A DNA stretch of 64,000 nucleotides from Macrostomum lignano. Lineage: Eukaryota. Each line of letters starts with the position of its first letter. Within the stretch, counting starts at the first letter, position 1. The notes beneath the pieces are model-generated. The model saw only the letters and a program-made list of their open reading frames with translations. It was not told the DNA's origin and did not search any database. Both the position numbers and the translations under genes were made by a program. The DNA lies in the NCBI GenBank assembly GCA_002269645.1, contig NIVC01000390.1, positions 372,001 to 436,000 on the forward strand. The letters are read 5' to 3'. Shown here piece after piece: positions 17,906-48,495 of the stretch.

Positions 17906-20900
17906 ATGGAGCCGCCTACAGCCACCAAGTCCAAGGCTGAACGAACCAGAAATGTGTGCATCTTGGCCCACGTTGACCACGGCAAGACCACCCTGGCTGA
18001 CTGTTTAATAGCTACAAACGGCATCATTCCTAGTCGCTCAGTTGCCCGCCTGCGCTACATGGACAGCTTAGAACAGGAGCAGGAGCGCGGCATCACTATG
18101 AAAAGCTCCATAATATCTTTGCTATACAATCGCAAAGAATGTTCCGAACAGTACGTTGTTAACCTGATTGATAGTCCCGGTCATATCGACTTCTCCTCGG
18201 AGGTGGGTAAGGGGTTGCTTTTGCTTGTTTTTTGCTGTTTTTAGCTCCGAGCATCTGTAGAAAAGCGCCACGAAGTCAAGAATATTTCTGGCTTAAGTCC
18301 CTTGCATGTATCCAACCCCTGCTCTATAAATATGCGCCTTTCAGCCCCTTACAGATATGCACTATTATGCATCCTAATAATCTAATAGATTTCCACCTAA
18401 AGCTGTTCAAATAACTACCCTAACCCATTGTTGATATCCGCTCCTAATCCTCGTGGATACCCGCGCCTAATCATCATAGATATCCGCCCTTAATCATCAT
18501 ACATGTAGATATCCGCCCCTGATCCCCATAGATACCCGCCCCTAATCATAATAGATATCCGCCCCTAATCTTCATAGATATCCGCCCCTAATCCCCATAG
18601 ATACCCGCCCCTAATCATCATAGATATCCGCCCCTAATCCTCATAGATACCCACTCCCAATCATAGATATCCGCCCCTAATCCTCATAGATACCCGCTCC
18701 CAATCATAGATATCCGCCCCTAATCCTCGTCGATATCCGCATCTAATCCTCATAGATATCCGCCCTAATCCTCATAGATATCTACTACTAATCCTCATAG
18801 ATATCCACCCTAATCCTCATAGATATCTACTACTAATCCTCATAGATATCCACCCTAATCCTCGTCGATATCCACCCCTAACCCCTTCGCACCAATTAAA
18901 TTCACCTTAAATGGGCCTTGTGATCCACCTTGATGCTCCAATACTCCACCCAGGTGTCAGCCGCGGTCCGCCTCAGCGATGGCGCCATCGTAGTTGTGGA
19001 TGCGGTAGAAGGCGTCTCGCCCCAGACTGTAGCCGTGCTACGCCAGGCCTGGCGAGAGAGCGTCACGCCTGTACTATTAATTAACAAAGTCGACAGGCTA
19101 ATATTAGAGCTGCGGCTAAGTCCCACGGATGCCTATCACCACCTGTGGAAGCTAATTGAATCCGTGAACGCTCTGATGGCTGAGCTCTATCGAATGGAAT
19201 TCTTCGAGCGGCAAGAGCAGCAAGAACAGCAGCAGCAGCAGCAACAACAGCAAGAGAAGCCAAAGGAATCGCAGCCTGTCGAAAAAACCACCGACAGCGT
19301 CGCCGAGGTGACACTGAGCAGCGATTGGCTGAGCGGCTTGGAGTCGGCCGAAGACGAGCACGTGTACTTTGCGCCGGCGCGCGGCAATGTTGTATTCGCT
19401 AGCGCCCTCGACGGCTGGGGCTTTCGTCTGGACGATTTCGCTGGATTATTAGCTAAGAGACTGGGCTGCAGCGAACGGATACTTAGCAGGGCTCTGTGGG
19501 GCGACTATTTTTATGCTGCTAAGGAGAAAAAGGTCAGTTTTTTAGTTATGTGCTTGCATACTACTCATATACTACTTTGTTAGTTCTAGCTGAGGACAGT
19601 CAGACCACTGAGGCAGGAAGTTTCTTATTATCAGGCGAGAACTTTAGACGCGATGATTGGCTGCGTTTCTATGGAAATTATTTGGTGTTTAGATTTAGAA
19701 AGCTTTCAGCAATTTTTTTGGCGTGTTTTCGTATACGATTTTTATTAGGCCACAGAGTTACGTCTGTTTAAATGTCGTTCTACCAGGCATCGCGGAAATT
19801 TTGTTTTTGAGAAGTGGACAAGAGTTCCACTACTACAGGTATATTCTCGAGCCTGTGTAGCGCCAATCTAGTGCTGAAGGCGAGGGTTTAGTGCCAATTT
19901 AGTGCCGAAGGAGATAATGATAATAATTGATTACAACTGCCCCAATGGCCAGATGTGCAACCGACAGCTCAGCCGCAGCTATTGCGCGGCGCATCTGAAG
20001 GCTACGTACGGCTGTTCAGTCCAAGGACTGGGGGTCGCCACACACCCTCAATTACCCCAGCTAATGCTGGCACCCATTTTACAGCTGGGTGAACTGAAGC
20101 AATGCAGAGTTATAAGGGTCTTGCTCAAGGACACAAATTGTTTCAGTGGGATCGGGAATCGAACCCCCGACCTTCAAGTCGTGAGTCCGACGCTCTAAAC
20201 ACTATGTTACAACCCCCTGAAGGCGAGGATTTAACGCCAATTTAGTGCTGAAGGCAAAATATTAGCGTCGAAGGCGAGATTTCAGCGGAACTTTACATGC
20301 ATCCCATTATTTTCTGTAATATTAGGTCAGTTCCTTCATAGCAGTTTAGCAATGATTTTAAAGGTTAGGAACCGTGCCCCCCCCCCCCCAAATTAATGTT
20401 TCTGGTGCCTACGTTCTACTAATGCCTTACCTTGTGTTGCTTCTAATTAGCACTAGGCTAGTTAGAGTTTTGGTATAGAATTCATATGGCGTTCTATCCA
20501 ATGAATATAAACTGTCTCATCCAAACAGTCACTCTATGGCACTTGAAGGAAAAGTAGTTTCAGAGCAATACGAGCGTAACATGTTAATAATAAATACTCC
20601 GATTTCTAGGTGTACAGAGGCGCCAGCGTCAAAGGTCGCAAACCGCTATTCGTACAGCTTGTACTAGAGAACCTGTGGACAGTTTACGACACTTTTGTTA
20701 CTAATCGGGATGCCGATAAGATAAGCAAAATGTGCGCCAGTTTAGACATCCGCCTTGGGCCGCGCGATCTTAAATCTGGCGCTGATCCGCACTCGGCACT
20801 GGCCGCTTTTTCCGCCCAATGGCTGCCGGTGGCCCGCGCCGTCCTAGAAGCCGTTGTGGCCAGGTGCCCCTCGCCTCGACAGCTGAGCACTGATAAGGTA

Positions 20901-23900
20901 GGCATTTTTTATTAGACTTGACTAAAATCTTAATAGTGCACATTTGTATGGCCAACAATCCAGTGGCCAAACCAGTCGGATTATATTGAAGGCTAGGCTA
21001 AATGTCTATATTGTATTGCTATTATTTTCATAAGCATAATGTTTTAGTTGCTCTCTATCTACTTCAAGGTCAACCGCCTGCTAACTATCGGCGGCGTTGA
21101 AGGCAGCCCGGAGAGCGCAGGCTTAAGCTGCCTCCGTCAGCATTTTCTCGCCTGCAGCCCTGACGGTCCTCTTGTCGCGTTCGCCTCCAAAATGATGGCC
21201 GTGCCGGCTGGCTGCATTGTTGAACCGGCTCCGGCCGGTCTGACTTCGGCTCCGCCGCCGGAAGCCTCGGCCACATCGGCTGCCGAACTTGAGCAGCGCC
21301 GTCTTGAGGCCCGACGCCAGTGGGAGGCAATGCGGGCCACCAAGGCTGCCGCTGTCGATGCCAACGGCGAAAGTGCCGCCGAAGCTTCCGCTTCCAACAC
21401 GGACAACGATTCTTCGCCGAGCGTCTACGTAGCCTTCTGTCGCATCTATTCGGGCATTGTTCGGCCCGGCGATCGCCTGTTTCTGCTGTCGCCGCGCCAC
21501 CGACCCGACCGGTTGCCGCCGGGCCTGGCCGAATTGACGCCGGACGCGCTGGACGCTGAGAAACGACTGTCCGATTCCGGACTGAGACACGCGAGCGTTT
21601 GCACAATAGGCCGAGTGCTACTAATGCGAGGTCGCGACTTCGAATCGGTGCCCGGCGCCGGCGCCGGCGCCATTGTTGGCGTCGAAGGTCTCGCCGATCG
21701 GGTTATTAAAACGGCAACTTTGAGCGCTACGCTGGCTTGTCCGGCTTTTAGCGACATGGCGTCGGAGGCGGCGCCCATCATCCGGGTGGCAGTCGAGTGC
21801 GTCAATCCGGCCGATCAGAGCCGCCTGCTGGCCGGGCTGCGCCTGCTAGAGCGGCACGATCCCGGAGCCGAGGTGCTGCTGGAAGATACTGGCGAGAATG
21901 TCGTCTGCTCTAGTGGGGAGGTGCACCTGGCTAAGTGTTTAAGCGACCTACGGCAGTGCTATGCTAAGGTGAGAATTTGTTTCATTAAAATATTATTGGG
22001 GATTTAGACATGAGTGTCAGGGGTCTAGACCTAGGTGTCAGGGGTCTAGACCTGGGTGTCAGGGGTCTAGACCTAGGTGTCAGGGGTCTAGACCTAGGTG
22101 TCAGGGGTCTAGACCTGGGTGTCAGGGGTTTAGACCTAGGTGTCAGGGGTCTAGACCTGGGTGTCAGGGGTTTAGACCTAGGTGTCAGGGGTCGACCTGG
22201 GTGTCAGGGGTCTAGACCTGGGTGTCAGGGGTTTAGACCTGGGTGTCAGGGGTCTAGACCCGGGTGTCAGGGGTCTAGACCTGGGTGTCAGGGGTCTAGA
22301 CCTGGGTGTCAGGAGTTTAGACCTGGGTGTCAAAGGTCTAGACCTGGGTGTCAGGGGTCTAGACCTGGGTGTCAGGAGTTTAGACCTGGGTGTCAAAGGT
22401 TTAGACCTGGATGTCAGGGGTCTAGACCTGGGTGTCAGGGGTTTAGACCTGGGTGTCAGGGGTTTAGACCTGGGTGTCAGGGGTTTAGACCTGGGTGTCA
22501 ATAGTTTAGACCTGGGTGTCAGGGGTTTAGACCTGGGTGTCAATGGTTTAGACCTGGGTGTCAGGGGTTTAGACCTGGGTGTCAGGGGTTTAGACCTGGG
22601 TGCCAAGTTTTGATCTAGCTGTCAGGATTCCTGTCTGGATGTCAGGGTTGGATCTTGTCATCAATTTTGATTTGGGTGTCAGGAAATCCTAATCGGGAGT
22701 CGGGGGCTGCCAAACACATGGCCTCCAATAAAAATATAATGTTCATGCTTGTGTGGAAGTGTTCTATATTGACGATTCAATTCAATGAAACATTTTACAA
22801 TTGTAGCAAAAAATAGATTTAATAATACTCCATACTCCGCAATTTGCTATCGTCGTCCAGGTGGAATTCACCACCTCTCCTATCGTGGTGCCGTTCCGTG
22901 AGACATTAGCTACGGACGAGGCTTTGGCTGAAGCCGCCGCCGCAGCCGCCGACGATCCCGATGCTGACACAGACGACGCGGACGAAGCGCCGCCGGAAGA
23001 GCTGCTCAGCCAGCTGGACATTGGCGAATCTGGCGGCAAAGACGATCCAGAGGTGCTAGACGCCTGTCGGGGCCTCGTCTGCTGTCGAATGCAGGCTCGC
23101 GACGCCGACCGACATCTGGCGCTGACTGTCCGCGCCGTTCCTCTGTCGGCTGGCGCCATTCGCCTGCTGGAGAACCACGCCGATGCGCTTCGCAGGCGTC
23201 CCACTGCTGCCGGCGCCGCTGACACCGCGCTTCTAGCCCTGCGCGACGGCCTTCGTAGCGAACTCCTAGCCTTAGATTCAGCCGCCACTTCTGATGCTGC
23301 CGCCGCTTCTGTTGAACTTGGCAGACTTGCCGACTGTTCCGTCTTGGCTGCCGGGCCCCGCCGCGATCCCTGCAACCTGCTGCTGCTTGGCCCGTCCGCC
23401 AGACTGCCCGACGGTACCCTGGCCGCGCCATTGCTGCCTACTAATAGTACTAATAGTACTCCTGCATCGGCTGCTTCCTCGCACCTGTGGCAGGCGATAA
23501 TTAACGGCTTCCAATGGACTTGTCAACAAGGTCCGCTTTGTCGAGAGCCTCTACGCGGCGTCGCCTTCGTTCTATTGGACGTTTGCGAAGTTTCAACAGC
23601 TGGAGACGAGCGCTACCCGGAGCTGACGGTGTCAGCCGGTCAGCTGATGAGCCACGCCAGCAAGACGTTCGGCAAAGCGTTCCTGTGCCACGCCAATAGG
23701 CGGCTCATGCTGGCCGCGTTCACCGTTGATGTGCAGTGCCGCAGCGAGGTAATGAATTTACCTATCTAGGGCTGTAGGATGTACTCGTAGGCTTTCAACC
23801 GGCTGATGTAACCACTGATGGATTGGGGGGGGGGGTAGCTAACTATTGATGGATTGGGGGGAGTAGCTAACTATTGATGGATTGGGGGGAGTAGCTAACT

Positions 23901-25494
23901 ATTTATGGATTGGGGGAGTAGCTAACTATTGATGGATTGGGGGGAGTAGCTAACTATTGATGGATTGGGGGGAGTAGCTAACTATTGATGGATTGTGGGG
24001 AGTAGCTAACTATTGATGGATTGGGGGGAGTAGCTAACTATTGATGGATTGGGGGGAGTAGCTAATTATTGATGGATTGGGGGGAGTAGCTAACTATTGA
24101 TGGATTGTGGGGAGTAGCTAACTATTGATGGATTGGGGAGAGTAGCTAACTATTGATGGATTGGGGGGAGTAGCTAACTATTGATGGATTGGGGGAGTAG
24201 CTAACTATTGATGGATTGGGGAGAGTAGCTAACTATTGATGGATTGGGGGGAGTAGCTAACTATTGATGGATTGGGGGGAGTAGCTAACTATTGATGGAT
24301 TGGGGGGAGTAGCTAACTATTGATGGATTGGGGGGAGTAGCTAACTATTGATGGATTGGGGGGAGTAGCTAACTATTGATGGATTGGGGGGTAGCTAATT
24401 ATTGATAGATTGGGGGGGGGGGTAGCTAACTATTGATGGATGGGGGGTAGCTAACTATTGATGGATGGGGGGGAGTAGCTAACTATTGATGGATGGGGGT
24501 AGCTAACTATTGATGGATGATGGGTAGCTAACTTTTGATGGATGGGGGTAGCTAACTATTGATGGATGGGGGTAGCTAACTATTGATGGATGGGGGTAGC
24601 TAACTATTGATGGATGGGGGGTAGCTAACTATTGATGGATGGGGGGTAGCTAACTATTGATGGATGGGGGGTAGCTAACTATTGATGGATGGGGGGTAGC
24701 TAACTATTGATGGATGGGGGTAGCTAACTATTGATGGATGGGGGGGTAGCTAACTATTGATGGATGGGGGTAGCTAACTATTGATGGATGGGGGGTAGCT
24801 AACTATTGATGGATTGGGGGGGGGTAGCTAATTATTGATGGATTGGGGGGGGGTAGCTAACTATTGATGGATGGGGGGTAGCTAACTATTGATGGATGGG
24901 GGGTAGCTAACTATTGATGGATGGGGGTAGCTAACTATTGATGGATGGGGGTAGCTAACTATTGATGGATTGGCGAGGGAGGTAGCTAATCTTGTAGGTC
25001 TTATATATGGTTTTTGGTCAATACGCACAAAAACCACTACATGTAGAGAATTATAAGAATCGAGTGCAAAATTACATTGTAAAACTAGCATAGACTAAAT
25101 TAGCCGCACAATCTCGCGCGAATACCCGCAGGTATTAGGCAAAGTACACGCAGTCCTAGCCAAGCATCAGGGCCGCATTGTGTCGGAGGACCTGCGAGAA
25201 GGCACTAACATGTTTGTACTCCGCGGTCACATGCCAGTTATTGAAAGCTTCGGCCTAGCAGATGAGCTACGCAAACGAACTTCGGGTTTCGCCGGGGCGC
25301 AGCTTCGCTTCAGTCACTGGGCCCTGTGCGACTGGGATCCGCTGATGCTGCCCCGCGAAGACGACGACCTGCGCGACGAACGAATGCGGATTGTCAATTA
25401 TCTGATGGAAGTGAGACGGCGCAAAGGCATGCCAGTTAGGCAGCAGATTGTTCAACACGCTGATAAACAGCGGACTAGAAGCAGGAAGAAGTGA
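17906..25494 (+). CDS. EFL1: Elongation factor-like GTPase 1 (Ria1/EFTUD1), 60S ribosome maturation, ~1104 aa
   Basis: Exons 17906-18202, 18954-19532, 20610-20897, 21069-21968, 22861-23748 and 25132-25494; all introns GT-AG, phase 0. G motifs [24 protein letters not shown]. Also [26 protein letters not shown] and the EFL1-type C-terminus [16 protein letters not shown]. Confidence 0.93.
18430..18880. repeat. ~21-22-bp minisatellite in EFL1 intron 1
   Basis: Unit approx. TAGATATCCGCCCCTAATCCTCA. Confidence 0.9.
19914..20216 (-). mobile_element. tRNA-derived SINE (family A), inverted copy in EFL1 intron 2
   Basis: The reverse complement aligns along its length with 17372-17680. Confidence 0.8.
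22012..22603. repeat. 21-bp minisatellite in EFL1 intron 4
   Basis: Unit GGGGTCTAGACCTGGGTGTCA; it produces the periodic GVRGLDL ORFs. Confidence 0.95.
23815..24972. repeat. ~26-28-bp G-run minisatellite in EFL1 intron 5
   Basis: Unit G(n)AGTAGCTAACTATTGATGGATT with variable G-run length; shifts to G(n)TAGCTAACTATTGATGGAT rightwards. Confidence 0.95.
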
Positions 25495-25919: not shown

Positions 25920-26119
25920 TTGCGGATGCTTACTGTCATCCAGTTTGTTTAATATCGGAGACAAAAGTACGTTATTGCCATAGATAGTAGTTCAGAATCT
26001 ATGGAAGAAACTAAATCTAAATTTAGCATCTCTAGATTCTAAAAATAGCATTTTTTCTTAGACTCGATACATCTCTTACACAACAGATTTAGAAAGTAGT
26101 GTCATTAACTGCATAAATA

Positions 26120-26896
26120 CGAGGGGTGTTCAAAAAGTCTTAGGACTTTTTCACATTATTTTAACAGTCAGCAAGAGTAACAGAGACTGATTTATTTCAT
26201 AGCGGCTTTACTTACTAATGACCTAGTGAAAGAATTTTGAAGATATCATGAACTTTTCAAGAGTTAAGCCTCCTTAACTGCAGTGGAGTACTTCATCTCA
26301 ATGAACAGGAACCGAACTGGACTACAGTTTTTAACTCTCACAGAAATTAACCAAATTCGACATTGTGAGAAACTTTGTGCGACATTGTCCATGTCATCAC
26401 TTTCTATATCTATGGTACAAGTTTCATTTGCTTCTGCTTGTGTGGCACTCTGAATCTGAGGGGCAGAGTTCATGCTAATAGTGTCAGCCTTGAGCAGGAA
26501 GTGCGACAGGTTCTTGTTGTCCACGAAATGCCAAGACAGGCGTACGCAGATGCCATTGAAGACATGCTTTCCCGGTGGTGGAAATGCAATCCAACTGAAG
26601 GGTGCCTATATTGAGGTCTCAGTTGCCACTAAGGAAGACATTTGAACTTTTTTGAAAGACAACTGACTTACTGTTTCCTGGGGCTCCATATGCAGCATCC
26701 AAGTTCCTGTTCATGTATTGAGATGCAGTACCCCACTTCAAGTAAAGAGGTATAACTTTTAAAAAGTTCTTGATATTTTCACAATTTTTCACTACGAATG
26801 GAAAAACTTATAGGGTAAATAAGTAAAGCCGCTATGAAATAAATCAGTTGCTGTTACTCTTGCTGACTGTTAAAAAGAGTCATGCGACACCCCTCG
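26120..26896 (+). mobile_element. Internally deleted mariner-like element with ~190-bp inverted repeats
   Basis: Termini (TA)CGAGGGGTGT / ACACCCCTCG. The arms align (26120-26312 vs 26703-26896). Residual transposase C-terminus AYADAIEDMLSRWWKCNPTEG at about 26540-26610. Confidence 0.7.
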
Positions 26897-27720
26897 TGTA
26901 ACTGAATGGCCTATTTAGTGGGTACTACAAGAAATACTGTATTTACTGTGAGCGATAGGAGTGTACAGATGAGCTGTAGTTTTAGCCACAACTCCTTGCA
27001 ATTTAAATGCCACTGTTCCCTGCCGTTGTTTCCTTTGATCCGATTGTCCGAAGAATGTTTTGGTTGCCGTATCGCTTCGTTTGAGTGACTGGAAGATTAC
27101 CAGCTTAAAAGGGCAAGTTGCTCTGTGCCTCGCCTAAACTGCATTCGCTCGTGATTTCAATTAAATAAGTCGTTGCGTGCATTTTGTATTGGTTGCCAAG
27201 ATTAAAATCTTATAAGATTATGCGAGTATATTTTCTGTATGGAAATGACAGAGTATTATCCTGCACTTATTTGCTTGTCTTGCTGTCTTGTTTCTTTTCA
27301 TTTTTTCTACAGGGACTGCTAGTTATTTTAATTGATTTTTATTTAGCTACTTGTAGTAGTAGTTTAGGCATTTTGATTGAAAATTCCTGCGTTAGATAAG
27401 ATACAATTTTTTATAACTATTATTGTAGCACATTTTAGTACAGCAAGCCCGCTCCCTGGTCCAGTCAACAGGTCTAAAAAATCTTGATAGATATATTTTC
27501 CTTCTACTAAACAGCAGTATTAGTAATATAAGCGTTTTTAGGTATTTTCAAACGAAAAAAGAAGCATAGGTTTTTTTTCAGATGCAGCAAATAAGGGTAA
27601 ACGAGCCTTAAACGCATGTTTACTACTGAAAATTAGTAGACAAGTAGGCTGTATTTTGTTCTACAGATTATATGAATGTGTTATTTAATTCTAACAGGCC
27701 AATTATTATTTGCATGCACA

Positions 27721-28110
27721 ATGAGTTCGTCAAGGTACAACTACGGCGGCGGAGGCGGTGACGGAGGCGGTGGCGGCGCTGATCAGCCGCAGCCGCAGCC
27801 GCAGCATCCAGACGATATCCGGCTGCAGCAAATGCAGCAGACAGTCGGCGAAGTGTCCGACGTGATGCGGGACAACATGAACAGGATTATCGAACGGGAT
27901 GGCAACATCAACAAGCTGGTGGACCGGACCGAGGCGCTGCAGGAGTCCGCTGTGCAGTACAGCCGGACTACAACTCGGGTGCAACGGAAAATGTGGTGGC
28001 AGAATACCAAAATGAAGATTATTCTGGCTGTTGTGGTTGCCGTTATTATCATCATTATTATTATGTCCATATTGGCTTCGGCTGGAGTGTTCCAGTTGAA
28101 GTCTGCCTGA
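27721..28110 (+). CDS. Synaptobrevin/VAMP-family R-SNARE, 129 aa, single coding exon
   Basis: SNARE helix IRLQQMQQTVGEVSDVMRDNMNRIIERDGNINKLVDRTEAL with zero-layer Arg, juxtamembrane RKMWWQN, C-terminal TM helix. The ATG at 27721 is preferred over the GTG at 27676. Confidence 0.9.
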   Translation: MSSSRYNYGGGGGDGGGGGADQPQPQPQHPDDIRLQQMQQTVGEVSDVMRDNMNRIIERDGNINKLVDRTEALQESAVQYSRTTTRVQRKMWWQNTKMKIILAVVVAVIIIIIIMSILASAGVFQLKSA

Positions 28111-29294
28111 TAATCTGCTGTCTTATCTCTGTATGCGTTGTCTAAGCCCCAGAAAATCTTGACAACTACTTCTGTGAGCCAGAATATTAAACTTTCACAG
28201 CTAAAGATTCATTGCAAACAACGCACTAGTAATTTTAGCGACTAAATCGCGCAACATAAGCGGGAGTTGCAGAATTGTAAAGTCGGTGTTTTAGCGCTTA
28301 TGTTTCGACTTACTCAAGTAGACTAGATAGAGTTGTTATAGATGCGAAATGCGATTCTAGTTTATAAAGTGACCCCAGAGTTGATTCAAAGTCGCAGAAA
28401 ATGAAACGCCTCAAATTGGCTCTTAGGCGACTTGTACTGACTGTGACATCTCATCATTTTAGAGTCGCCTAGAGCCAGATGTAAAAAAAATAAGCTAAAG
28501 TGATTGGGCTGACCAAGGTTTATCTAAATTCCGCAGGTCTATATTTATGTATGTTTCTTAATTATGCGCAGCAACAAAGAATTATTGTGCTTCAACCCAG
28601 AGAAGTTTCTATCATAATACTGAACAGCTTCTCTTTTATTTATTGTGCCATTATTATCGCAATTTAAAGCAACAATTCGGATCTATATAAGGCCCTAAAT
28701 GTATTACATTATTTGAAAAGCTAGTTTTTAGCAGGCTATGCACACTACTGTCAGTAGCAGACGTTATTACCAGCTGCTTATAAATCTTCCTGTAGATACG
28801 AGCTATTCTTCCCTGTAACAATCTGCTATCACACGGCTAAAATGACCAAACTTATGCAGTTTTTTATCATTCACTAACACCTGCCAACACTCTACTAAGC
28901 ACTGGTCTAGGTAGAAGTGCCTTTTAATTTGTTGCCGTCTTCCAATCTGCTTCTTTCATAAATTTCTTAACAACCAGTTAAACTCTGGGTTATTTTTCCT
29001 AATTTTATTCAGTCTTTTATGTTTATTAAAGTAATCCCCATTTTGACCATTTTAATTGTTTTTATTGTATTAATTATGATTAGTAATCATTATCGGACAA
29101 TTCTATTTTTCTCGCGCTTCCTGTCTGTAAGCCCTTGGCTGTTGCTATTATTTATCCAATATATATATTCCGCTTTTGTAAATATACTATTATAATGACA
29201 CCGTTTTTACTTTCACTCCTGTCAGGGTCAATATTTTTATTGTATTGTTGTGTATAGTAATGTACTCGGCCACTGTTAGCATGTTATATGAAAA

Positions 29295-29445
29295 CTGAGA
29301 ATTATTGTGCTCGCACTTGTGTTAATCCATAATGACAGTGCGTGCTATCCGTTCTCAGAGAGTAATCAACTCATGTAGGGTGTAGATACTCCTAGGCTGA
29401 GCATTGACATATTCAGTGTACTGGGCGTTTGATGCACCTACAATA
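29295..29445 (+). ncRNA. Box H/ACA guide RNA, copy A (predicted U2-U34 guide)
   Basis: Hairpin CTGAGAA/TTCTCAG; H box AGAGTA (29359-29364); hairpin GGTGTA/TGCACC with upper stems CCTAG/CTGGG and CTGA/TCAG; ACA (29440-29442) three nt from the predicted end. Confidence 0.8.
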
Positions 29446-29543
29446 CACTTTTTTACCATTAAGTACAGTACCGGTAGATGTTAAGTCACTGTCTAGAAAC
29501 CGTTAAACAAAATTACTAATTGAAATTGAATAAACGAAACAAA

Positions 29544-30312
29544 AGTAGACAATACTCAGGTAGTGAACTTCCAGGTAAACAATATTCAGGTAGTGAAAAG
29601 CCAAGTAGACAATATTCAGGTAGTGAACTTCCAGGTAGACAATATTCAGGTAGTGAAAAGCCAAGTAGACAATATTCAGGTAGTGAACTTCCAGGTAGAC
29701 AATATTCAGGTAGTGAAAAGCCAAGTAGACAATATTCAGGTAGTGAACTTCCAGGTAGACAATATTCAGGTAGTGAAAAGCCAAGTAGACAATATTCAGG
29801 TAGTGAACTTCCAGGTAAACAATATTCAGGTAGTGAAAAGCCAAGTAGACAATATTCAGGTAGTGAACTTCCAGGTAAACAATATTCAGGTAGTGAAAAG
29901 CCAAGTAGACAATATTCAGGTAGTGAACTTCCAGGTAGACAATATTCAGGTAGTGAAAAGCCAAGTAGACAATATTCAGGTAGTGAACTTCCAGGTAGAC
30001 AATATTCAGGTAGTGAAAAGCCAAGTAGACAATATTCAGGTAGTGAAAAGCCAAGTAGACAATATTCAGGTAGTGAAACGCCAGGTAGACAATATTCAGG
30101 TAGTGAAACGCCAGGTAGACAATATTCAGGTAGTGAAACACCACGTAGACAATATTCAGGTAGTGAAACGCCAGGTAGACAATATTCAGGTAGTGAAAAA
30201 CTACGTAGACAATATTCAGGTAGTGAAACGCCAGGTAGACAATATTCAGGTAGTGAAACGCCAGGCAGACAGTATTCAGGTAGTGAAGTTCCAGGTAGAC
30301 AATCTTCAGGTA
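29544..30312. repeat. 30-bp minisatellite with 60-bp higher-order (A/B) periodicity
   Basis: AATATTCAGGTAGTGAACTTCCAGGTAGAC alternates with AATATTCAGGTAGTGAAAAGCCAAGTAGAC. Confidence 0.95.
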
Positions 30313-30362
30313 GTTTACATAGTGTAGACAGTACTAATACAGCACGCACTGTATTACGACAA

Positions 30363-30513
30363 CTGAGAACTATTGTGCTCGCACTTGTGTTAATCCATAA
30401 TGACAGTGCGTGCTATCCGTTCTCAGAGAGCAATCAACTCATGTAGGGTGTAGATACTCCTAGACTGAGCATTGCAATATTCAGTGTACTGGGCGTTTGA
30501 TGCACCTACAATC
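30363..30513 (+). ncRNA. Box H/ACA guide RNA, copy B
   Basis: Near-identical to copy A; H box AGAGCA 30427-30432; ACA 30508-30510. Confidence 0.8.
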
Positions 30514-30756
30514 ACAATATACAATATACAATGTACTAAATCTCTAAGATCTTTAACACTGTGTATCATCAAGTATGGTAGATGGCAGATGCTAAGTCAC
30601 TGTCTGAGGCAAAATTGCTAATTAAAATTGAATAAACACAAGGCCAGGTAGACAATATTCAGGCAGTTCAAAGTAGTGTACTGAGACAGTCGTTAGCCAT
30701 GCATTTCTCCCCATCACCCGCAGCAACCGGGCTGACTGCATTCATCCTGCTTCATC

Positions 30757-33700
30757 ATGGCTTCATCGCAGTCGCAGCGGTCCCAGCCTAATCAACAGCA
30801 GTCGGAGCCGCAGCCGTCCACTAATCAGCGCTTCGCCGATCTGCACGTATTCTGCAACTCTCTCGGCTTCCCGGACGAATCCGGTGTGTACATTCGCGAG
30901 CCAGACTGCGCTGAGACTCTGCGCGACATTCTCCGCTGCCTCCGTCGCGAAGATGACACCTGCGATATGCGGCGCGAGCTGGCCAGGCTGCGTTTGCTGC
31001 AGCGCGACCTGCTGCCCCTAGTGAAGCGCTACGCTGACGAAACCGACGTTTTAGACCGGACACTCCGACTGATGGTGTGCCTGACCAAGCCGGCCCTGCT
31101 GTGCTTCCAGAACCAGCTGCCTGACCCGGCACGCAGGCCGCACTACATCGCCTTGCTCAGCCACCTGGCCGACTACAAGCTGGCTTTTTGCGACGTCGAG
31201 CTGCTGCGTCAGTTCACTAAATTAATCGATAATTTTGTTGATCGTCGCGACGCTGGCTCGGATTATATCGGCGACGAGGAGCGCGAAGGACTCGAAAGGG
31301 TGCTAGTTGTACTGCGCAATGTCCTACACGCCGGCGGAGTCGATGCCGCTGTTAATTGCGGTCAGGACGCCCGCGACGATCCGCGCATCTGTCACGAGCG
31401 CCTGATTCGCTGCCTGCTGGACGCCGGCCTGCCGCGGGCCCTGGTTGGCTTGGCGGCCAACTCCGCCGGTTGCAAGCACTACAGCATGCACCTGTTGGAG
31501 ATTTTGCACCTGCTGCTGCGGCACAGGAATCCAGCCGCTCTGGCCGGCGGCAGCGCCGCGGTTGCGTCCGCATCGGCCGCGCTGGAGCGAGCGGCCAAAG
31601 CCGAGGCTCGATCCGAGACTCGGTGTGACAATTTTCGATACCTGTCCACAAGGCATGGAAGGTGAGTGATTAGATGACGAGGCGCCTGACAATCTTAATA
31701 GAGTCATAGTAGCTCTTGCTGTTTACCGTATAACAGACCATATAATGCGTGTAAAAATTGCTGACATGACTTGCCCCCCAACCAGCGGTATTGTGAAATC
31801 GGCCAGTTATATTAGAATACGAGGCGCAAAAAGGTAAAGAGCCCGCCGGAGCGATGGCTAGCATTGGTGAGTCAAGAAGGGGGTTAAGGGGAAACTGGAC
31901 GATCGATAAAGCAGTGTACAGTGTACAGAGCGAAGGGAGCGAGGCAGGGGCAGGTAAATTGTACATTACTTTGCTAATTGAATATATGAGCGTAGCAGAT
32001 CAGCTTAGACAAGTTCAAGTTCCAATACAAGCGCTGAGGCAATTCTGCACCATTCCGCTGAGCACATGCCAATGCTGTACTCAGGCACGCACTCATACAC
32101 AAGCTCACACGGGGTGTACAGCGGCCCTGACTTTCTGCTCTAGCCAGGCATGTACACTCTCTGTGCCTTAGGGATTGGCCCTCACGGGTCTGAATCGTAC
32201 GACAGGCCCCAAATGAATTGTGCTGGCGCACGGAATCGAACCAGGGGTCGTGATGCAAGAGTCGGGCGCTTATTACGCATGTAAACGCCAACATATACGC
32301 AAAGCATTCAGTCCGGCATATATGGCCTGAGAATTTTGTGCTCGCATTTGAGTCAAAAATAATATTTTTTAAATGACAATGCGTGCTATCCGTTCTCAGA
32401 GAGTAAATTTAAGGTGTAGATACTCCTAGGCTGATTGAATTGATTAGATTCAGTTTATTAGGCGTTTGATACACCGACATTAATAGATTTGTATTCTGAG
32501 AATTTTTGTGCTCGCATTTAGGCTAATGTAATTTAATGGCAGTGCGTGCTATCCGTTCTCAGAGAGCAATTGACTTATTGGTGCAGATACTCCTAGACTG
32601 ATATTCTTTTATTCAGTTACACTGGGCGTTTGATGCACCTACAATGACTCTATTACAATTTATTTACTAGAAAGCTTCAAGTCGCGTTGAATTTTGCTGG
32701 CCGATGGACAAAATTATCGATAGAAAGACCAGCTAAATCTGAGCGTTAAGCCTCCAGTAGTCATAAGCAGCCAGGTAGCTAATTAGAGCATTAGGTAGTT
32801 TATAGACAGGTGAGCCAATATCCAGGTAGCTAATAGCCATGTAGCTAGTAGCCAGGTAGTTAATAGCCAGGCAGTTAGTAGACTGATTGTCAAGTAGCCA
32901 GGTAGCCAATAGCCGGGTTGTCAAGTAGCCAGGTTGTCAAGTAGCCAGGTAGCCAATAGCCAGGTTGTCAAGTAGCCAGGTAGCCAATAGTCTGGTTGTC
33001 AAGTAGCCAGGTAGCCAATAGTCTGGTTGTCAAGTAGCCAGGTAGCCAATAGTCTGGTTGTCAAGTAGCCAGGTAGCCAATAGCCGGGTTGCCAAGTAGC
33101 CAGGTTGTCAAGTAGCCAGGTAGCCAATAGCCAGGTTGTCAAGTAGCCAGGTAGCCAATAGTCTGGTTGTCAAGTAGCCAGGTAGCCAATAGTCTGGTTG
33201 TCAAGTAGCCAGGTAGCCAATAGTCTGGTTGTCAAGTAGCCAGGTAGCCAATAGTCTGGTTGTCAAGTAGCCAGGTAGCCAATAGTCTGGTTGTCAAGTA
33301 GCCAGGTAGCCAATAGCCGGGTTGCCAAGTAGCCAGGTTGTCAAGTAGCCAGGTAGCCAATAGCCAGGTTGTCAAGTAGCCAGGTAGCCAATAGTCTGGT
33401 TGTCAAGTAGCCAGGTAGCCAATAGTCTGGTTGTCAAGTAGCCAGGTAGCCAATAGTCTGGTTGTCAAGTAGCCAGGTAGCCAATAGTCTGGTTGTCAAG
33501 TAACTTGATTGTCAAGTAGCCAACTTTTCAAATAGCCTCAATGCCCACTGCCTCTGCAGATTCGGCGGCACCTACCAGCTAACTGGGGTCACGGGCGTGG
33601 CCGGCCGGCCCGTGGTGTTCCACCGGGACCTCAACCAGCTGCGGGACTGGTCCTGCGATCAGGACAAAACCCGCCGAAAAGTGCCAAAAAATCGCCGCCT

Positions 33701-36700
33701 AGTAGTGGACGATCCTCGCTCGACCGGCGCTGGCGGCTGCGATTTTGAAGGCGGCGCCGCGCCTATCACAACCTCGCGCGTCACCGAGGGTCTGCGCGAC
33801 CTATGCGAAGCCCTCCTAGCCCGAGCGTTCAACCCGCTGATGCGGCGCGCTCGACAACACCTGGATAGTCCGTCTAGTCAGGTTGGAGACGAGACCTTCT
33901 ACCTCTGGTCCGTGAAGTTCTTCTTTGCCTACGCCCGACACCGGCCTGGCGGATCCCGGCGCCCCGCGCTGCACCATCTGACTGCCGCGTTCAGCTTGGA
34001 CTCGTTCGGCTTCGTTCATCGCCAGATAATGACCTGCGCGGAGAGCGCCAATCTTGAGCGCGGCGCCAATCAAGCTATTTGGTCGCGCCGGCTATTGCTA
34101 GCCTTGAGCGCCTATAATCAAATGTTTCTAGTGCTGTCAGCTGCCATCGCCCTGCCGTCTAATTCAGCTAATAAAAATGGCCCGGCCGATTACGAGACTG
34201 ATCCCGATTGGCTAGCCCAGGTGGAAGAGTCCCGCGCCCTGGCCCGCGAGGTTCTGTACCTGCCAGAGTATCGCGATGCCTATCCCGAACTATTGCGCAG
34301 CATCCAAGACCGCTGGGCGGGCCTGGATCTCTATAGGGAAGTCCTAGAAGGCGGATTCGCTATGATGCGCCTAATGGACCGCTGGGCCCGAGACGGCAAT
34401 CTGGTGCAGCAGCGCAGGAAGAGCCGCGCCAAGGCTAGGCGCCGTCGCCGACAGCAAGGTAATAAATCGGCGGCTAGCAAACGGAAAGCGGCTAAACAGC
34501 AACAGGCGACAGTGCTGACGGAGGAGCAGCGCGACGACTTGTGGAACAGCTTCGGCGACGCGCTCAGCCAGCTGGTTTCCGCGCCTCCCGAAGGCGTCGA
34601 GGCCGAGGTTAACGAAGCCGGCCTGCCGCGCCTGTTCGACCCACTGGCTCCAGAGGCCGAGCAGGCGGCTTCAGCAGCCGGCGCTGTACAGCGTCTGCTT
34701 ATCGACGGCCGCCTAGCAGAGTCGGTGGTGTGCGCTCGGCGCTGCCGGCTGTTGTTCCCCATGTGCGGCCACTTCGACATTGCCGACGATCTGCTGTTGC
34801 TGCGAGCGATCCTAATGGACGCCAGTCTCGTTGACAGTGCAAAGCCGGATGCGGCCGAGCCTGATGCTGACGTCGCCGTTGGCAACGAGGAGGCGGACGA
34901 TGAGGCGCCGCCTGTGAACGAGGAGCTCCTCGAGGCGCAGGGTCTAGTCGACGACGAGGAAGACTTAGAATTCGAGGAAGGCCGTTTCGACAGCGGCGAA
35001 TACTTGCTGCGGTTCTGTCATCCCGCCACTGTGCTCGCGTTGACCCGGGTGTTGGCCAACTATCGGCTAAACGCGCCAGCCGTCAATTGTAGCGCTGTCC
35101 GGCTAGCGCATAAAATGATCACAGAAACCAGCGCCGGGCCCATGTTCTACCAGCTGAGAACGTTCCGCGTACTGCAGACTGTGCTGAAGGATCCCGACTG
35201 TCCGGACAAGGAGCTGCCGCGCCTCTGTCGCCATATTGTCGGCCAGTTTGTCGCCGCGGTGAAACGCAATCCGGCCGTATTCTGCGAGCCCCTGTTCCTC
35301 AAGTCGCTGCCTGAGGCGCGGGATATCTCCGACAACTACGCCGCCGCCATCGATCCGAAAGGCGCAGCGGCTGCCCGACGTCTGGGCGAAAAAGCTCGCT
35401 GGACGGAGAATCTGGACGCTGAGCTGCGCTGCCTGTACGATCTGGCCGTTCAACGCGAGGACGTAAACGACATTGTAGAATTTGTGCAGTCGGAACTGAG
35501 CGACCGGGGCCGCAGCCGGCGCCGGGTGATGCGGCGCATGGTGCAGCTGGGCCTCGGCTCCAAGGCGGCCGATTTCCGCAAGAAGCCGGCGACCAAAGCG
35601 AAGCGGGCCAAGCGACCGGGCGACAATCCGTCAAGTTCGAAGGCACGCCAGCGTCGCAGCAAAGCGACTAGCGGACAGAAAGGCGCGACCTCGGATGATA
35701 GCGACAGCGATGAAGCGGATCGTCGGGCAGGTCGCGATGGCGAGGAATTCGTTCCACCCTCGGGCTCTGCTGCCGCTAAATCAGCCTCGGCGCCGGCACC
35801 GCCGGCTCCGCGAATGGACGAAGCCAAACTGGCCGAGCGGCTGTTGAATGCCCGCCGACTGCAGTCCGATCGGCCCGGCGTGGCCGCCTGCCTGGCCTGG
35901 CTAGCTGACCAGCTGGCCGACTGTCTGCGCGACCGTCTGGCTGGTGACGCCGACGAGCAGGTTTTGCTCTGTCTGGACCCGGCTGCCGACGCCGCTCTGG
36001 ACGAGGAGCCAATCTGCGCCGGTCTGCTGCTTAGCGCCGGCCTGCAGCCGCCGGCCCTGGATGCCGCCAGCCGATTCTGGCGCTGCCCGGCCGACGCCAG
36101 CGCTGAGAAGCTGCGCCGAGTCCTGGACTTGTTGGCCGCCCCGAATGCCGATCTCGAGGCCCTGGTGCTGGCCAACTTTGGCCGGCCAGAGTTTTCCGAT
36201 AGCGACAATGGCGACGCTGATGAAAACGGCGGCGACGGCGACAGCGACATCGATGGCATTGGCGACGAGGACATCCGGAATGTGCTGCGACAATTTGCCG
36301 ACGACAACAACGACGTTTCTGACGAGTTCACCGACGCGCACAAGGCCGGGCCGTGCACCAGCCTGGCAGACTTTCGGCGCCAACGCCAGCAACAGCAGCT
36401 CAGATTGCCACCGTCGCGTCGTGAAGATCCGCTAGCCTTTGACGGCATTCTCAACTCGCCGCCAGCGTTGAAGTCCACGACGACGGCGGCCGATCGCAGC
36501 GAGTTTGACGCCTACATCCTGCCGGCTGGACGCACCGGCGGCGCGCCAGTCGCTGAGGACAGCAACAGCTGTCAGTCCGTTTCCTCTTCCGCCGCATCGG
36601 CGGCGGCCGGCAAAGAAAACGTCGATGTCGACGCCGACACGCAGGAGAAGCGCAACAGCAAACGGCCCCGTCTGTCTTCGTCTTCCTCTTCGTCATCATC

Positions 36701-36839
36701 CGATGATGATGAGACCGACCCAGTTGTCGGCGTCGGCAAGTCGGCACGATCGGCCGCTGCCTTATCGACTGTATCGCCGTCATCTGCCGCCGTCAAACAG
36801 AAACGTCAGAAGCTGATCATGAGTAGCGACTCTGAATAA
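30757..36839 (+). CDS. TIMELESS: Protein timeless homolog (Tof1/Swi1/Timeout-type fork-protection protein), ~1394 aa
   Basis: Exons 30757-31661 and 33560-36839; the phase-2 intron (AG|GTGAGT..CTGCAG|A) joins RHG-R-FGGTY. N-terminal GVYIREPDCAETLRDILRCLRRED, central ETFYLWSVKFF and EPLFLKS, Myb-like WTENLDAELR, and C-terminal LQPP..FWRCP (PARP-binding-like). Confidence 0.92.
31997..32290 (-). mobile_element. tRNA-derived SINE related to family B, in TIMELESS intron 1
   Basis: The reverse complement has B box GGTTCGATTCC and shares blocks ATTTGGGG, GAGGGCCAA.CCC, GTGTACATGCCT and AGGGCCGCTGTAC with the 873 and 42401 copies. Confidence 0.65.
32327..32482 (+). ncRNA. Box H/ACA guide RNA, copy C (TIMELESS intron 1)
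   Basis: Same pockets as A/B; H box AGAGTA 32400-32405; ACA 32477-32479. Compensatory changes CGCAT/ATGCG, GGTGTA/TACACC, CCTAG/TTAGG. Confidence 0.8.
32496..32646 (+). ncRNA. Box H/ACA guide RNA, copy D (TIMELESS intron 1)
   Basis: H box AGAGCA 32563-32568; ACA 32641-32643; stem variant GGTGCA/TGCACC; starts 13 nt after copy C. Confidence 0.8.
32860..33522. repeat. 31-bp (16-bp subunit) minisatellite in TIMELESS intron 1
   Basis: Unit GTCAAGTAGCCAGGTAGCCAATAGTCTGGTT. Confidence 0.95.
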
Positions 36840-37120
36840 TAGCTACAATTCAGTAGTAGTAGCTGAATAATAGCTGTAATGGTACATTAATTCTTATTAT
36901 TTAGTGTCAATTTACCTGCCTGTTCGGCTGTAAAATTTTTCATCACTATTTATTTATTGTGACCTGACTTAGTTAATGTTTTATAATACGAATATTGTTC
37001 CCGTTCTGTTCAATTTGCAACAAGGCATTTTTTATCGTTGTTTACTAATGACATGGCATTTTATGTTACAACAGGCTGCATTTTTTCAATTCAATTCAAT
37101 TTCATATTAATTTAATTTTC

Positions 37121-37678
37121 CGCTTTCCTCACCCCAATGTACACCCACTCCCGATATCAGGGCACAATAGCCCGCTTTCCTCACCCCAATGTACATCCAC
37201 TCCCGATATCAGGGCACAATAGCCCGCTTTCCTCACCCCAATGTACATCCACTCCCGATATCAGGGCACAATAGCCCGCTTTCCTCACCCCAATGTACAC
37301 CCACTCCCGATATCAGGGCACAATAGCCCGCTTTCCTCACTCCAATGTACACCCACTCCCGATATCAGGGCACAATAGCCCGCTTTCCTCACCCCAATGT
37401 ACACTCACTCCCGATATCAGGGCACAATAGCCCGCTTTCCTCACTCCAATGTACACCCACTCCCGATATCAGGGCACAATAGCCCGCTTTCCCCACCCCA
37501 ATGTACACTCACTCCCGATATCAGGGCACAATAGCCCGCTTTCCTCACCCCAATGTACATCCACTCCCGATATCAGGGCACAATAGCCCGCTTTCCTCAC
37601 CCCAATGTACACCCACTCCCGATACCAGGGCACAATAGCCCGCTTTCCTCACCCCAATGTACACTCACTCCCGATATC
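37121..37678. repeat. 52-bp minisatellite between TIMELESS and TMF1
   Basis: Unit CGCTTTCCTCACCCCAATGTACACCCACTCCCGATATCAGGGCACAATAGCC, about 10.7 copies. Confidence 0.95.
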
Positions 37679-38215
37679 AAACCCTAGTTGCTCCAGTTTA
37701 TAATCAATTAGCAATTTTACTCTTAAACTAACATTATTATCAACCATCCAATATCATTGCTCTTATTTGAAATTTCCATTCGTTTACTCTTTGTATTTCA
37801 TTTGATCTTTCAGTCAAACTAAGCAGCTAGCTGGATATTATTTTTGTACTCTGCTTTTCCCAGTTCATTGGTAATTTCTGCATTGACATTATTTTGCTCC
37901 TAAATAGCCTGAAGTTAAGAAGTAAATATTTTTTTCAAAAATAATTGTACTTATGTGACGTAATCCGATTTACTTTTACTTTTTGGCAATATGAAAGAGT
38001 CATCGTAAGTGCCAGCTTTACTACTACTAACAGAAGTACTAAACAAATGTTAATAAATCATTGCTTGCACCATTTCTGCTGCTCAAGTTAACCAGCTCAT
38101 CATTGGTGCGGGCTTAAATAGCCGCAAAAAGTGCTAATAATACAAAAATAGTAATTGTCTCAGAAGCGTAGCTCTGGAAAACTAAAACAATAACAGCTCA
38201 ACTGTAGCAGGCAAA

Positions 38216-48495
<10,280 letters not shown>

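What the first reader, a model, noticed from the sequence alone, without database searches (positions are those of the whole stretch)
29295..32646. Four paralogous box H/ACA RNAs whose 3' pocket fits U2 snRNA U34
Seen: four ~150-nt copies (29295, 30363, 32327, 32496) fold as hairpin - H box (AGAGTA/AGAGCA) - hairpin - ACA+3 nt. Loops and the hinge diverge strongly, while the pocket sequences GTGC, GCTATCCG, GATACT and CGTTTGAT are invariant. Stems covary: CGCAC/GTGCG vs CGCAT/ATGCG vs CGCAT/GTGCG; GGTGTA/TGCACC vs GGTGTA/TACACC vs GGTGCA/TGCACC; CCTAG/CTGGG vs CCTAG/TTAGG. Established: the conserved U2 branch-point region reads AUCAAGUG-U34-A-GUAUCU. Psi34 is made by SCARNA8/U92 in vertebrates and by Pus7 at the equivalent U35 in budding yeast. 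Inference: CGUUUGA pairs with UCAAGUG (two G-U wobbles) and GAUAC pairs with GUAUC, leaving U34-A35 unpaired 14 nt from the ACA box, the canonical geometry. The ORF track does not show this cluster, and it is probably unannotated.
Basis: partly seen in the sequence, partly recalled or inferred. Interest (0 to 1): 0.85.

Follow-up and report, generated by a model that had tools for sequence, protein, structure and literature searches.

The report
Flatworm H/ACA guide RNAs for U2
Four unannotated copies of a small box H/ACA guide RNA sit in and just upstream of the Timeless gene of the flatworm Macrostomum lignano, and one guide pocket fits the conserved pseudouridine site U34 of U2 spliceosomal RNA; this is a real but ordinary kind of gene, newly seen in this phylum.

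Summary
Four 151-156-nt paralogues lie on the + strand at 29295, 30363, 32327 and 32496. Each folds as hairpin, H box (AGAGYA), hairpin, ACA plus 3 nt, with both internal-loop pockets invariant.

The window is Macrostomum lignano contig NIVC01000390.1. Copies 3 and 4 lie in sense in intron 1 of a Timeless homologue. Copies 1 and 2 lie between synaptobrevin and the Timeless ATG.

Two homeologous contigs carry the same arrangement. Between them, stems, pockets and boxes are nearly unchanged, while loops, hinge and tail change at or above the 3-4% non-coding background rate. No other copy occurs in the 64-kb window, and there are no target-site duplications.

The 3' pocket pairs 8+5 bp (two G-U) around U34 of the conserved U2 5' region, 14 nt from ACA. 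Among the five human snRNAs this is the only strong hit.

Limits: covariation is thin (two compensatory pairs, not significant). The worm's own U2, expression and genome-wide copy number could not be checked. The 5' pocket has no identified target. No Rfam family matches, SCARNA8 included.

Verdict: a new member of a known kind, a functional analogue of SCARNA8 / pugU2-34/44. Interest is modest.

The parts
29295..29445 (+). H/ACA copy 1 (type A). P1 29295-29301/29352-29358; 5' pocket strands 29302-29311 and 29343-29351; H box AGAGTA 29359-29364; P3 29379-29384; U2 pocket strands GATACT 29385-29390 and CGTTTGAT 29426-29433; ACA 29440-29442.
   Evidence: (183.6 bits).
30363..30513 (+). H/ACA copy 2 (type A, near-duplicate of copy 1). 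H box AGAGCA 30427-30432; pocket strands 30453-30458 and 30494-30501; ACA 30508-30510.
   Evidence: (181.8 bits).
32327..32482 (+). H/ACA copy 3 (type B, most divergent loops, short hinge). H box AGAGTA 32400-32405; pocket strands 32419-32424 and 32463-32470; ACA 32477-32479. Lies in Timeless intron 1.
   Evidence: (151.6 bits); weak snR11 H/ACA hit, 21 bits.
32496..32646 (+). H/ACA copy 4 (type C), 13 nt downstream of copy 3. H box AGAGCA 32563-32568; pocket strands 32586-32591 and 32627-32634; ACA 32641-32643. Lies in Timeless intron 1.
   Evidence: (166.4 bits).
30757..31661 (+). Timeless homologue exon 1 (PF04821). Likely host gene of copies 3 and 4; copies 1 and 2 lie upstream on the same strand.
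31662..33559 (+). Timeless intron 1 (GT...AG, 1898 nt), containing copies 3 and 4 and a minisatellite.
   Evidence: tblastn of P0001 on the window and reading of the splice sites.
33560..36839 (+). Timeless exon 2, 100% identical to BOX15_Mlig001836g2; the end coordinate includes the stop codon.
29543..30314 (.). Minisatellite (30/60-nt unit, CCAGGTAG core) between copies 1 and 2. It is part of the duplicated unit, not of the RNA.
32793..33522 (.). Related minisatellite (31/62-nt unit, CCAGGTAG core) downstream of copy 4 in intron 1.
27718..28110 (+). Synaptobrevin gene, the upstream same-strand neighbour. Copies 1 and 2 lie between its stop codon and the Timeless ATG.

Best explanation
These are four paralogous genes for one box H/ACA pseudouridylation guide RNA of Macrostomum lignano.

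Shown: each copy has two hairpins with internal-loop pockets, an H box, and an ACA followed by 3 nt. Pockets, boxes and stems are under purifying selection while loops drift. The 3' pocket is complementary to the conserved U2 snRNA sequence on both sides of U34-A35 at the canonical distance from ACA.

Inferred:
- The RNAs are cut out of a longer Pol II precursor by exonucleolytic trimming to the H/ACA RNP. Copies 3 and 4 would come from Timeless intron 1. Copies 1 and 2 would come from an upstream intron or outron of the same transcription unit.
- They assemble with dyskerin, Nhp2, Nop10 and Gar1.
- The equally invariant 5' pocket guides a second, still unidentified site.
For: Structure:
- MFE folds have z = -3.0 to -4.2, and the RNAalifold consensus is the same.
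- The upper stem base is 14 nt from ACA and 16 nt from the H box in all copies.

Selection among paralogues:
- 3 of 41 pocket and box columns vary, against 50 of 69 loop, hinge and tail columns (p about 8e-12).
- All four variable stem pairs stay paired, including a stepwise C-G, U-G, U-A series and a second U-A to C-G change.

Selection between homeologues:
- Two syntenic contigs keep all copy types.
- Non-coding background identity is 96-97%.
- Differences number 8 of 767 positions in stems, pockets and boxes, four of them an alignment shift, against 27 of 454 in loops (p about 1e-6).
- Paralogue similarity starts exactly at the predicted 5' end and, for copy 1 versus copy 3, stops at ACA+3.

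Target:
- CGUUUGAU pairs with A26-G33 and GAUAC with G36-C40 of U2.
- The pair next to the target is a G-C.
- This is the unique best hit among all U residues of five snRNAs, and shuffles reach it 11 times in 5000.
- The 13 bp exceed the 8-bp minimum reported in PMC6049503.
- Position 34/35 is a known guide-RNA target in vertebrates and Drosophila.

Genomic context: intron location in sense.
Against: - There is no expression or 3'-end data.
- The worm's own U2 was not available. My recollection is that nematode U2, and possibly fly U2, reads AUCAAAGUG. That variant would cut pairing on the 5' side of U34 to 5 bp, which is still above the reported minimum.
Only 23 nt of human U2 were checked against a paper.
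- Two adjacent G-U wobbles lie in the pocket; the perfect Watson-Crick target would be AUCAAACG-UN-(A)GUAUC, and 28S rRNA could not be scanned for it.
- Covariation is not statistically significant.
- No conserved CAB box is present.
- No Rfam family matches.
- One homeologous copy (L003:7047) carries a 1-nt insertion in the pocket.
Confidence: 0.72

Rival explanations
1. They are genuine H/ACA snoRNAs, but the real substrate of the 3' pocket is an rRNA or other RNA site, and the fit to U2 U34 is coincidental or secondary.
For: The pocket needs two G-U wobbles on U2, and its perfect complement (AUCAAACG-UN-(A)GUAUC) is a different sequence. There is no conserved CAB box in the apical loops (direct reading). 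28S rRNA and the flatworm's own RNAs could not be scanned. PMC3884663 reports guides with both snRNA and rRNA targets.
Against: U2 U34 is the only site with at least 9 bp for this pocket among five snRNAs. Shuffled pockets rarely reach 13 bp (11 of 5000). The hit falls on a uridine already known to be guide-targeted in other animals.
Confidence: 0.13
2. It is a locally amplified repeat (a SINE, MITE or satellite-associated element, or H/ACA pseudogenes) that merely folds like an H/ACA RNA and makes no functional RNP.
For: Copies are embedded in a duplicating unit with CCAGGTAG minisatellites. Copy number differs between homeologous contigs, 3 versus 2 upstream copies. Genome-wide copy number could not be measured. 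One copy has a pocket insertion.
Against: - There are no TSDs or terminal repeats.
- No copies occur elsewhere in the 64-kb window or in about 50 kb of homeologous loci outside the syntenic position.
- Substitutions avoid exactly the pockets, boxes and stems, both among old paralogues and between homeologues. Neutral repeats would not show this.
Confidence: 0.06
3. It is a structured cis-element of the Timeless pre-mRNA, for example a splicing or stability regulator, rather than a trans-acting guide.
For: All copies lie on the sense strand in or just upstream of one gene, and the arrangement is conserved in three contigs.
Against: The full H/ACA box and pocket grammar with correct spacings is not needed for a cis-element. 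Intronic, sense-strand location is the normal way animal snoRNAs are encoded (established knowledge). The 13-bp complementarity to U2 would be left unexplained.
Confidence: 0.04

Closest known systems
SCARNA8 / U92 / pugU2-34/44 (vertebrates) and Drosophila scaRNA:PsiU2-35.45 (pugU2-35/45)
   Same: It is a two-hairpin box H/ACA guide with a pocket complementary to the U2 sequences flanking U34 (U35 in fly numbering). It has the same predicted chemistry and the same substrate site, and the site is probably also reachable by Pus7, as in frog and fly.
   Different: - There is no detectable sequence or structure homology: no Rfam hit even at E up to 10.
- The second pocket does not fit U43/U44 of U2 or any other snRNA site.
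- Here the U34 pocket is in the 3' hairpin. In SCARNA8 the 3'-terminal pocket serves positions 43/44, so its U34 pocket must be the 5' one.
- There are four to five gene copies per locus rather than one.
- No conserved CAB box is present.
Generic intron-encoded box H/ACA snoRNAs of animals
   Same: Hairpin-hinge-hairpin-tail, ANANNA and ACA boxes, 14-16-nt pocket-to-box spacing, and sense orientation in an intron of a protein-coding gene.
   Different: Two copies share one intron only 13 nt apart. Two more sit upstream of the start codon, possibly in an outron of an SL trans-spliced gene, which is inference only. 30% of M. lignano genes are trans-spliced (PMC8629364).
Pus7 (stand-alone pseudouridine synthase)
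   Same: It makes the same U2 pseudouridine (psi35) in budding yeast and is thought to act at psi34/35 in Xenopus and Drosophila.
   Different: It is a protein enzyme that recognises the site itself rather than through an RNA guide, and it is unrelated to what is encoded here.
Yeast snR11 (RF01260)
   Same: It is the only Rfam model with any score on the region: 21.4 bits on copy 3, E = 0.027. It is also an H/ACA RNA.
   Different: The score is far below the gathering score of 42. Most of the model is skipped in the alignment and the guide sequences are not shared, so this is generic H/ACA shape only.

Membership tests
Box H/ACA guide RNA (class) | Hairpin-hinge-hairpin-tail secondary structure with an internal loop (pocket) in each hairpin | tested here: met
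   MFE folds of all four copies, RNAalifold consensus, and 97% of cells paired in the named structure against 27-49% for slid controls.
Box H/ACA guide RNA (class) | H box ANANNA in the hinge, directly after the 5' hairpin | tested here: met
   AGAGTA or AGAGCA directly after P1 in all copies. Only the degenerate fifth position varies.
Box H/ACA guide RNA (class) | ACA triplet 3 nt from the mature 3' end | tested here: inconclusive
   ACA lies one nucleotide after the 3' hairpin in all copies. Similarity between copy 1 and copy 3 ends at ACA+3. The real RNA 3' end could not be measured.
Box H/ACA guide RNA (class) | Target uridine positioned 14-16 nt upstream of the H or ACA box | tested here: met
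   14 nt for the 3' pocket and 16 nt for the 5' pocket in all four copies. PMC5733568 gives 15 +/- 1 nt.
Box H/ACA guide RNA (class) | Stable ~130-160-nt RNA bound by dyskerin, Nhp2, Nop10 and Gar1 | not testable with these tools
   No expression or RNP data are available.
U2-psi34 guide (function shared with SCARNA8 / pugU2-34/44) | Bipartite complementarity of at least 8 bp flanking U34-A35 of U2, with a canonical pair next to the target U | tested here: met
   8+5 bp with human-type U2, and a G33-C pair adjacent to the target. The U2 segment was checked in PMC2196410. The 8-bp rule is from PMC6049503. The M. lignano U2 itself was not available.
SCARNA8 / U92 family (homology) | Match to the family's covariance model | tested here: not met
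   No Rfam family reaches gathering score in the window. In E-value mode up to 10 on 29200-32750, only snR11, two C/D models and rpfG appear. That SCARNA8 is in Rfam is from my own knowledge.
SCARNA8 / U92 family (homology) | Second pocket directed at U2 U44/U43 | tested here: not met
   The best hits of the 5' pocket (UUGUGCU / UGCUAUCCG) on snRNAs are 9-10 bp, G-U-rich, and at other sites. There is no match at U43/U44.
scaRNA (Cajal-body-specific H/ACA RNA) | CAB box (ugAG) in the apical loops of both hairpins | tested here: not met
   UGAG occurs only in the 3' apical region of copies 1 and 2 and in the 5' hairpin of copy 3. It is not conserved across copies (direct reading). PMC3884663 notes that fly scaRNAs work without the CAB box.
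SINE / MITE or other mobile repeat | Target-site duplications or terminal inverted repeats at element ends | tested here: not met
   The 12-nt flanks of the four copies share no duplication. The inverted repeat CTGAGAA/TTCTCAG is internal and forms stem P1.
SINE / MITE or other mobile repeat | Many dispersed copies without conservation of specific internal segments | tested here: inconclusive
   There are no copies outside the syntenic site in the 64-kb window or in loci L002 and L003. Internal segments are selectively conserved. The whole genome could not be searched.

The most novel reading that the evidence does not exclude
The cluster may be a flatworm-specific dual guide in two respects. 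First, its invariant 5' pocket (target form CGGAUAGCA-UN-AGCACAA or a wobble variant) may direct pseudouridylation of a substrate not known to be guided elsewhere. Second, the two upstream copies may be released from the outron of an SL trans-spliced Timeless pre-mRNA. As far as I know, that would be an undescribed way of making snoRNAs.
Probability: 0.15. Interest if true: 0.55.

Novelty: new member of a known kind. Interest (0 to 1): 0.33.

Why it matters
Guide RNAs for spliceosomal snRNA modification have been described mainly in vertebrates, flies, a nematode and yeasts. I found no flatworm H/ACA guide in the searchable literature, and Rfam recognises nothing here.

A U2-psi34 guide in a basal flatworm would show that RNA-guided modification of this branch-point-region uridine, alongside Pus7, is widespread in Bilateria. 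It would give M. lignano annotators a first scaRNA-like gene family. It also offers a compact case (three contigs, 13 copies) of how guide RNA genes are kept intact while their surroundings churn through minisatellite expansion.

It does not change the understanding of how H/ACA RNPs work.

Tried and rejected
1. Rfam, at gathering score on the whole window and in E-value mode on the region, gave no family. There was only a 21-bit snR11 shape match.

2. Cross-species orthologues through the host gene failed. Two word-index protein searches and one exhaustive HMMER search found no Timeless relative closer than about 39% identity outside M. lignano. One distant locus, L125, has no covariance-model hit, and one look-up was not on record.

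3. The target of the 5' pocket was not found.
- A metagenome scan for the perfect-complement target GGATAGCATNAGCAC gave only unrelated bacterial contexts.

4. An attempt to obtain real eukaryotic rRNA from viral contigs gave two partial SSU fragments and no LSU, so it was not usable.

5. Literature look-ups for trans-splicing status found nothing: gene ids Mlig001836, Mlig010072 and Mlig025675, and the supplements of PMC8629364.

6. Antisense covariance-model hits (23-25 bits, for example 32406-32562 on the - strand) were rejected as an artefact, because P1 (CTGAGAA/TTCTCAG) reads the same on the reverse complement.

7. A tRNA scan found none.
Full report
**What is in the sequence**

Reading 29000-33000 and aligning the four stretches confirms four paralogous + strand elements at 29295-29445, 30363-30513, 32327-32482 and 32496-32646. 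Each has the following order:
- CTGAGAA;
- a 9-10-nt strand ending in TTGTGCT;
- a CGCAY...RTGCG stem with a variable apical part;
- TGCTATCCG, then TTCTCAG;
- AGAG(T/C)A;
- a variable 7-14-nt hinge;
- GGTGYA, GATACT, and a CCTAG...YTRGG stem with a CTGA/TCAG extension and a variable loop;
- CGTTTGAT, then RCACC, one nucleotide, ACA and three more nucleotides.

Copies 1 and 2 are near-identical. Copies 3 and 4 are each distinct, so there are three lineages.

**Is it more than chance?**

- Each copy folds on its own into hairpin-hinge-hairpin-tail with an internal loop in each hairpin. MFE z-scores are -3.0 to -4.2 against dinucleotide shuffles.
- RNAalifold gives the same consensus without being told the structure.
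- On the named structure, 97% of cells are standard pairs, against 27-49% when the 3' partners are slid by 1-3 columns.
- Covariation proper is thin. One pair runs C-G, U-G, U-A. A second, in the 5' upper stem, runs U-A to C-G. Three further pairs change through G-U. With four sequences this does not beat column shuffles (178/500).

The strong evidence is where substitutions fall. Variable columns number 3 of 41 in pockets plus boxes, 10 of 54 in stems, and 50 of 69 in apical loops, hinge and tail (Fisher p about 8e-12).

**Where it is**

The 1080-codon ORF at 33597-36836 is 100% identical to M. lignano BOX15_Mlig001836g2, a Timeless homologue. The window corresponds to GCA_002269645.1 contig NIVC01000390.1.
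- Exon 1 is 30757-31661.
- Intron 1 is 31662-33559 (GT...AG).
- Exon 2 starts at 33560.

Copies 3 and 4, 13 nt apart, therefore lie in sense in intron 1. Copies 1 and 2 lie between the stop of a same-strand synaptobrevin gene (28110) and the Timeless ATG. The NCBI gene calls list nothing for the elements, Rfam has no hit at gathering score in the whole window, and there are no tRNAs.

**Comparative evidence**

A covariance model built from the four copies finds only those four in the 64-kb window. The remaining low-scoring hits are two antisense artefacts of the palindromic P1 stem and one 11.7-bit chance match at 26009-26143 (E = 0.41).

The Timeless 90% cluster has members on two other contigs. 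Both loci were fetched. They show the same order of EF-G-like gene, synaptobrevin, Timeless and the next gene, and they carry the same elements:
- L002 has three upstream and two intronic copies.
- L003 has two upstream and two intronic copies.

These contigs are 96-97% identical to the window in non-coding DNA. That fits the known hidden polyploidy of this species (abstract of PMC10468722).

Between orthologous copies, differences number 8 of 767 positions in stems, pockets and boxes. Four of those are a one-base alignment shift. Two are the same change at the outermost pocket base. One is at the degenerate H-box position. In loops, hinge and tail the count is 27 of 454 (Fisher p about 1e-6; binomial against a 3.5% background, 1.6e-5). 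One copy (L003:7047-7198) has a one-base insertion in the GATACT strand.

Similarity between divergent paralogues begins exactly at CTGAGAA. For copy 1 versus copy 3 it ends at ACA+3. That is what selection on a mature RNA with those ends predicts. There are no target-site duplications.

No closer relatives of the host gene exist in the protein libraries, so cross-species synteny could not be used. A distant Timeless locus has no hit.

**The target**

In an H/ACA pocket, the strand 3' of the upper stem pairs with the substrate 5' of the target U. The strand 5' of the upper stem pairs with the substrate 3' of the following nucleotide. This is established knowledge.
- CGUUUGAU pairs with U2 A26-G33 (AUCAAGUG). 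That gives eight pairs: G33-C next to the target, then U32-G and G31-U wobbles.
- GAUAC pairs with G36-C40.
- U34-A35 are left free, 14 nt from ACA.

I scanned every U of human U1, U2, U4, U5 and U6. The U2 stretch TCAAGTGTAGTATCTGTTCTTAT was verified in PMC2196410. U2 U34 is the only site returned. Composition-preserving shuffles of the two strands reach 13 bp anywhere in 11 of 5000 trials. PMC6049503 reports 8 bp as the minimum for guided pseudouridylation. PMC5733568 stresses a canonical pair next to the target and 15 +/- 1 nt to the box. Both conditions are met.

The same papers establish that position 34 (35 in fly and budding-yeast numbering) is served by SCARNA8 / pugU2-34/44 in vertebrates and by scaRNA:PsiU2-35.45 in Drosophila. 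Pus7 serves it in yeast and probably also acts there in frog and fly.

If it carried the AUCAAAGUG variant, which I recall from nematodes, the 5'-side pairing would fall to 5 bp. That would still give 10 bp in total.

**The other pocket**

The 5' pocket (UUGUGCU / UGCUAUCCG, 16 nt to the H box) is just as invariant. It does not fit U2 U43/U44. A metagenome scan for its perfect complement returned only unrelated bacterial DNA. It is an orphan pocket for now.

**Comparison with known families**

Functionally this is a box H/ACA guide for U2 psi34, like SCARNA8/U92 and fly pugU2-35/45. Membership of that family is not supported, for four reasons:
- There is no covariance-model similarity, even at E up to 10.
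- The second pocket has a different specificity.
- The U34 pocket sits in the 3' hairpin. In SCARNA8 the 3'-terminal pocket serves positions 43/44.
- No CAB box is conserved, so Cajal-body residence cannot be claimed.

The gene organisation is unusual in detail but not in kind. It consists of multiple copies, two in one intron and two or three upstream, each unit trailing a CCAGGTAG minisatellite, with copy number differing among homeologues.

**How it most likely works**

Shown:
- H/ACA architecture.
- Selection on the guide elements.
- Complementarity to U2 U34.

Inferred:
- Co-transcription with Timeless.
- Release from the spliced intron. For copies 1 and 2, release would be from an upstream intron or outron; 30% of M. 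lignano genes are SL trans-spliced.
- Trimming to the RNP-protected ends, followed by dyskerin-catalysed isomerisation of U34 in U2.

I put about 0.85 on 'real H/ACA guide RNA genes' and about 0.7 on 'U2 psi34 is a true target'.

**Verdict**

It is a new member of a known kind in a phylum where such guides are unannotated. It is useful for annotation and for the evolutionary picture of U2 modification, but not surprising to a specialist. Interest is 0.33.

Noticed in passing
window 29543-30314, 30640-30680, 32793-33522: Each H/ACA unit is followed by a minisatellite, or a remnant of one, with a shared CCAGGTAG core that resembles an exon|5' splice-site junction (CAG|GTAG). The arrays differ in length between homeologous contigs.
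   Followed up: partly
whole window (for example 18433-18881, 22005-22602, 23828-24989, 37120-37679, 55471-56723, 57557-59015): The window is unusually rich in minisatellites: 39 TRF rows covering about 25 separate arrays with unit lengths of 20-60 nt, mostly in introns and intergenic DNA.
   Followed up: no
L002 8559-8709, 8933-9083, 9645-9795: One homeologous contig has three upstream H/ACA copies where the window and L003 have two, so the array expands and contracts, presumably by unequal exchange in the minisatellite.
   Followed up: partly
L003 7047-7198: This copy has a one-base insertion in the U2-pairing strand (GAATACT instead of GATACT). It is either a decaying copy or an assembly error.
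   Followed up: no
window 32327-32646: Copies 3 and 4 are separated by only 13 nt. They could be made as one four-hairpin twin H/ACA-H/ACA RNA rather than as two RNAs.
   Followed up: no
window 38946-39508: There is a coding 30-nt tandem repeat, about 19 copies translating as ([10 protein letters not shown])n, inside the 820-codon ORF 38216-40678. That ORF has no Pfam match.
   Followed up: no
L003 10001-13003: The NCBI model for this Timeless homeologue (P0003, 1000 aa) starts downstream of exon 1 and lacks the PF04821 domain, although the H/ACA-bearing intron lies just upstream. It is probably a truncated gene model.
   Followed up: no
L009, L028, L046, L095, L102 (metagenome contigs): Five unrelated metagenome contigs share about 50 nt of conserved context around GGATAGCATCAGCAC. 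This is an unidentified conserved element with no evident link to the flatworm RNA.
   Followed up: no
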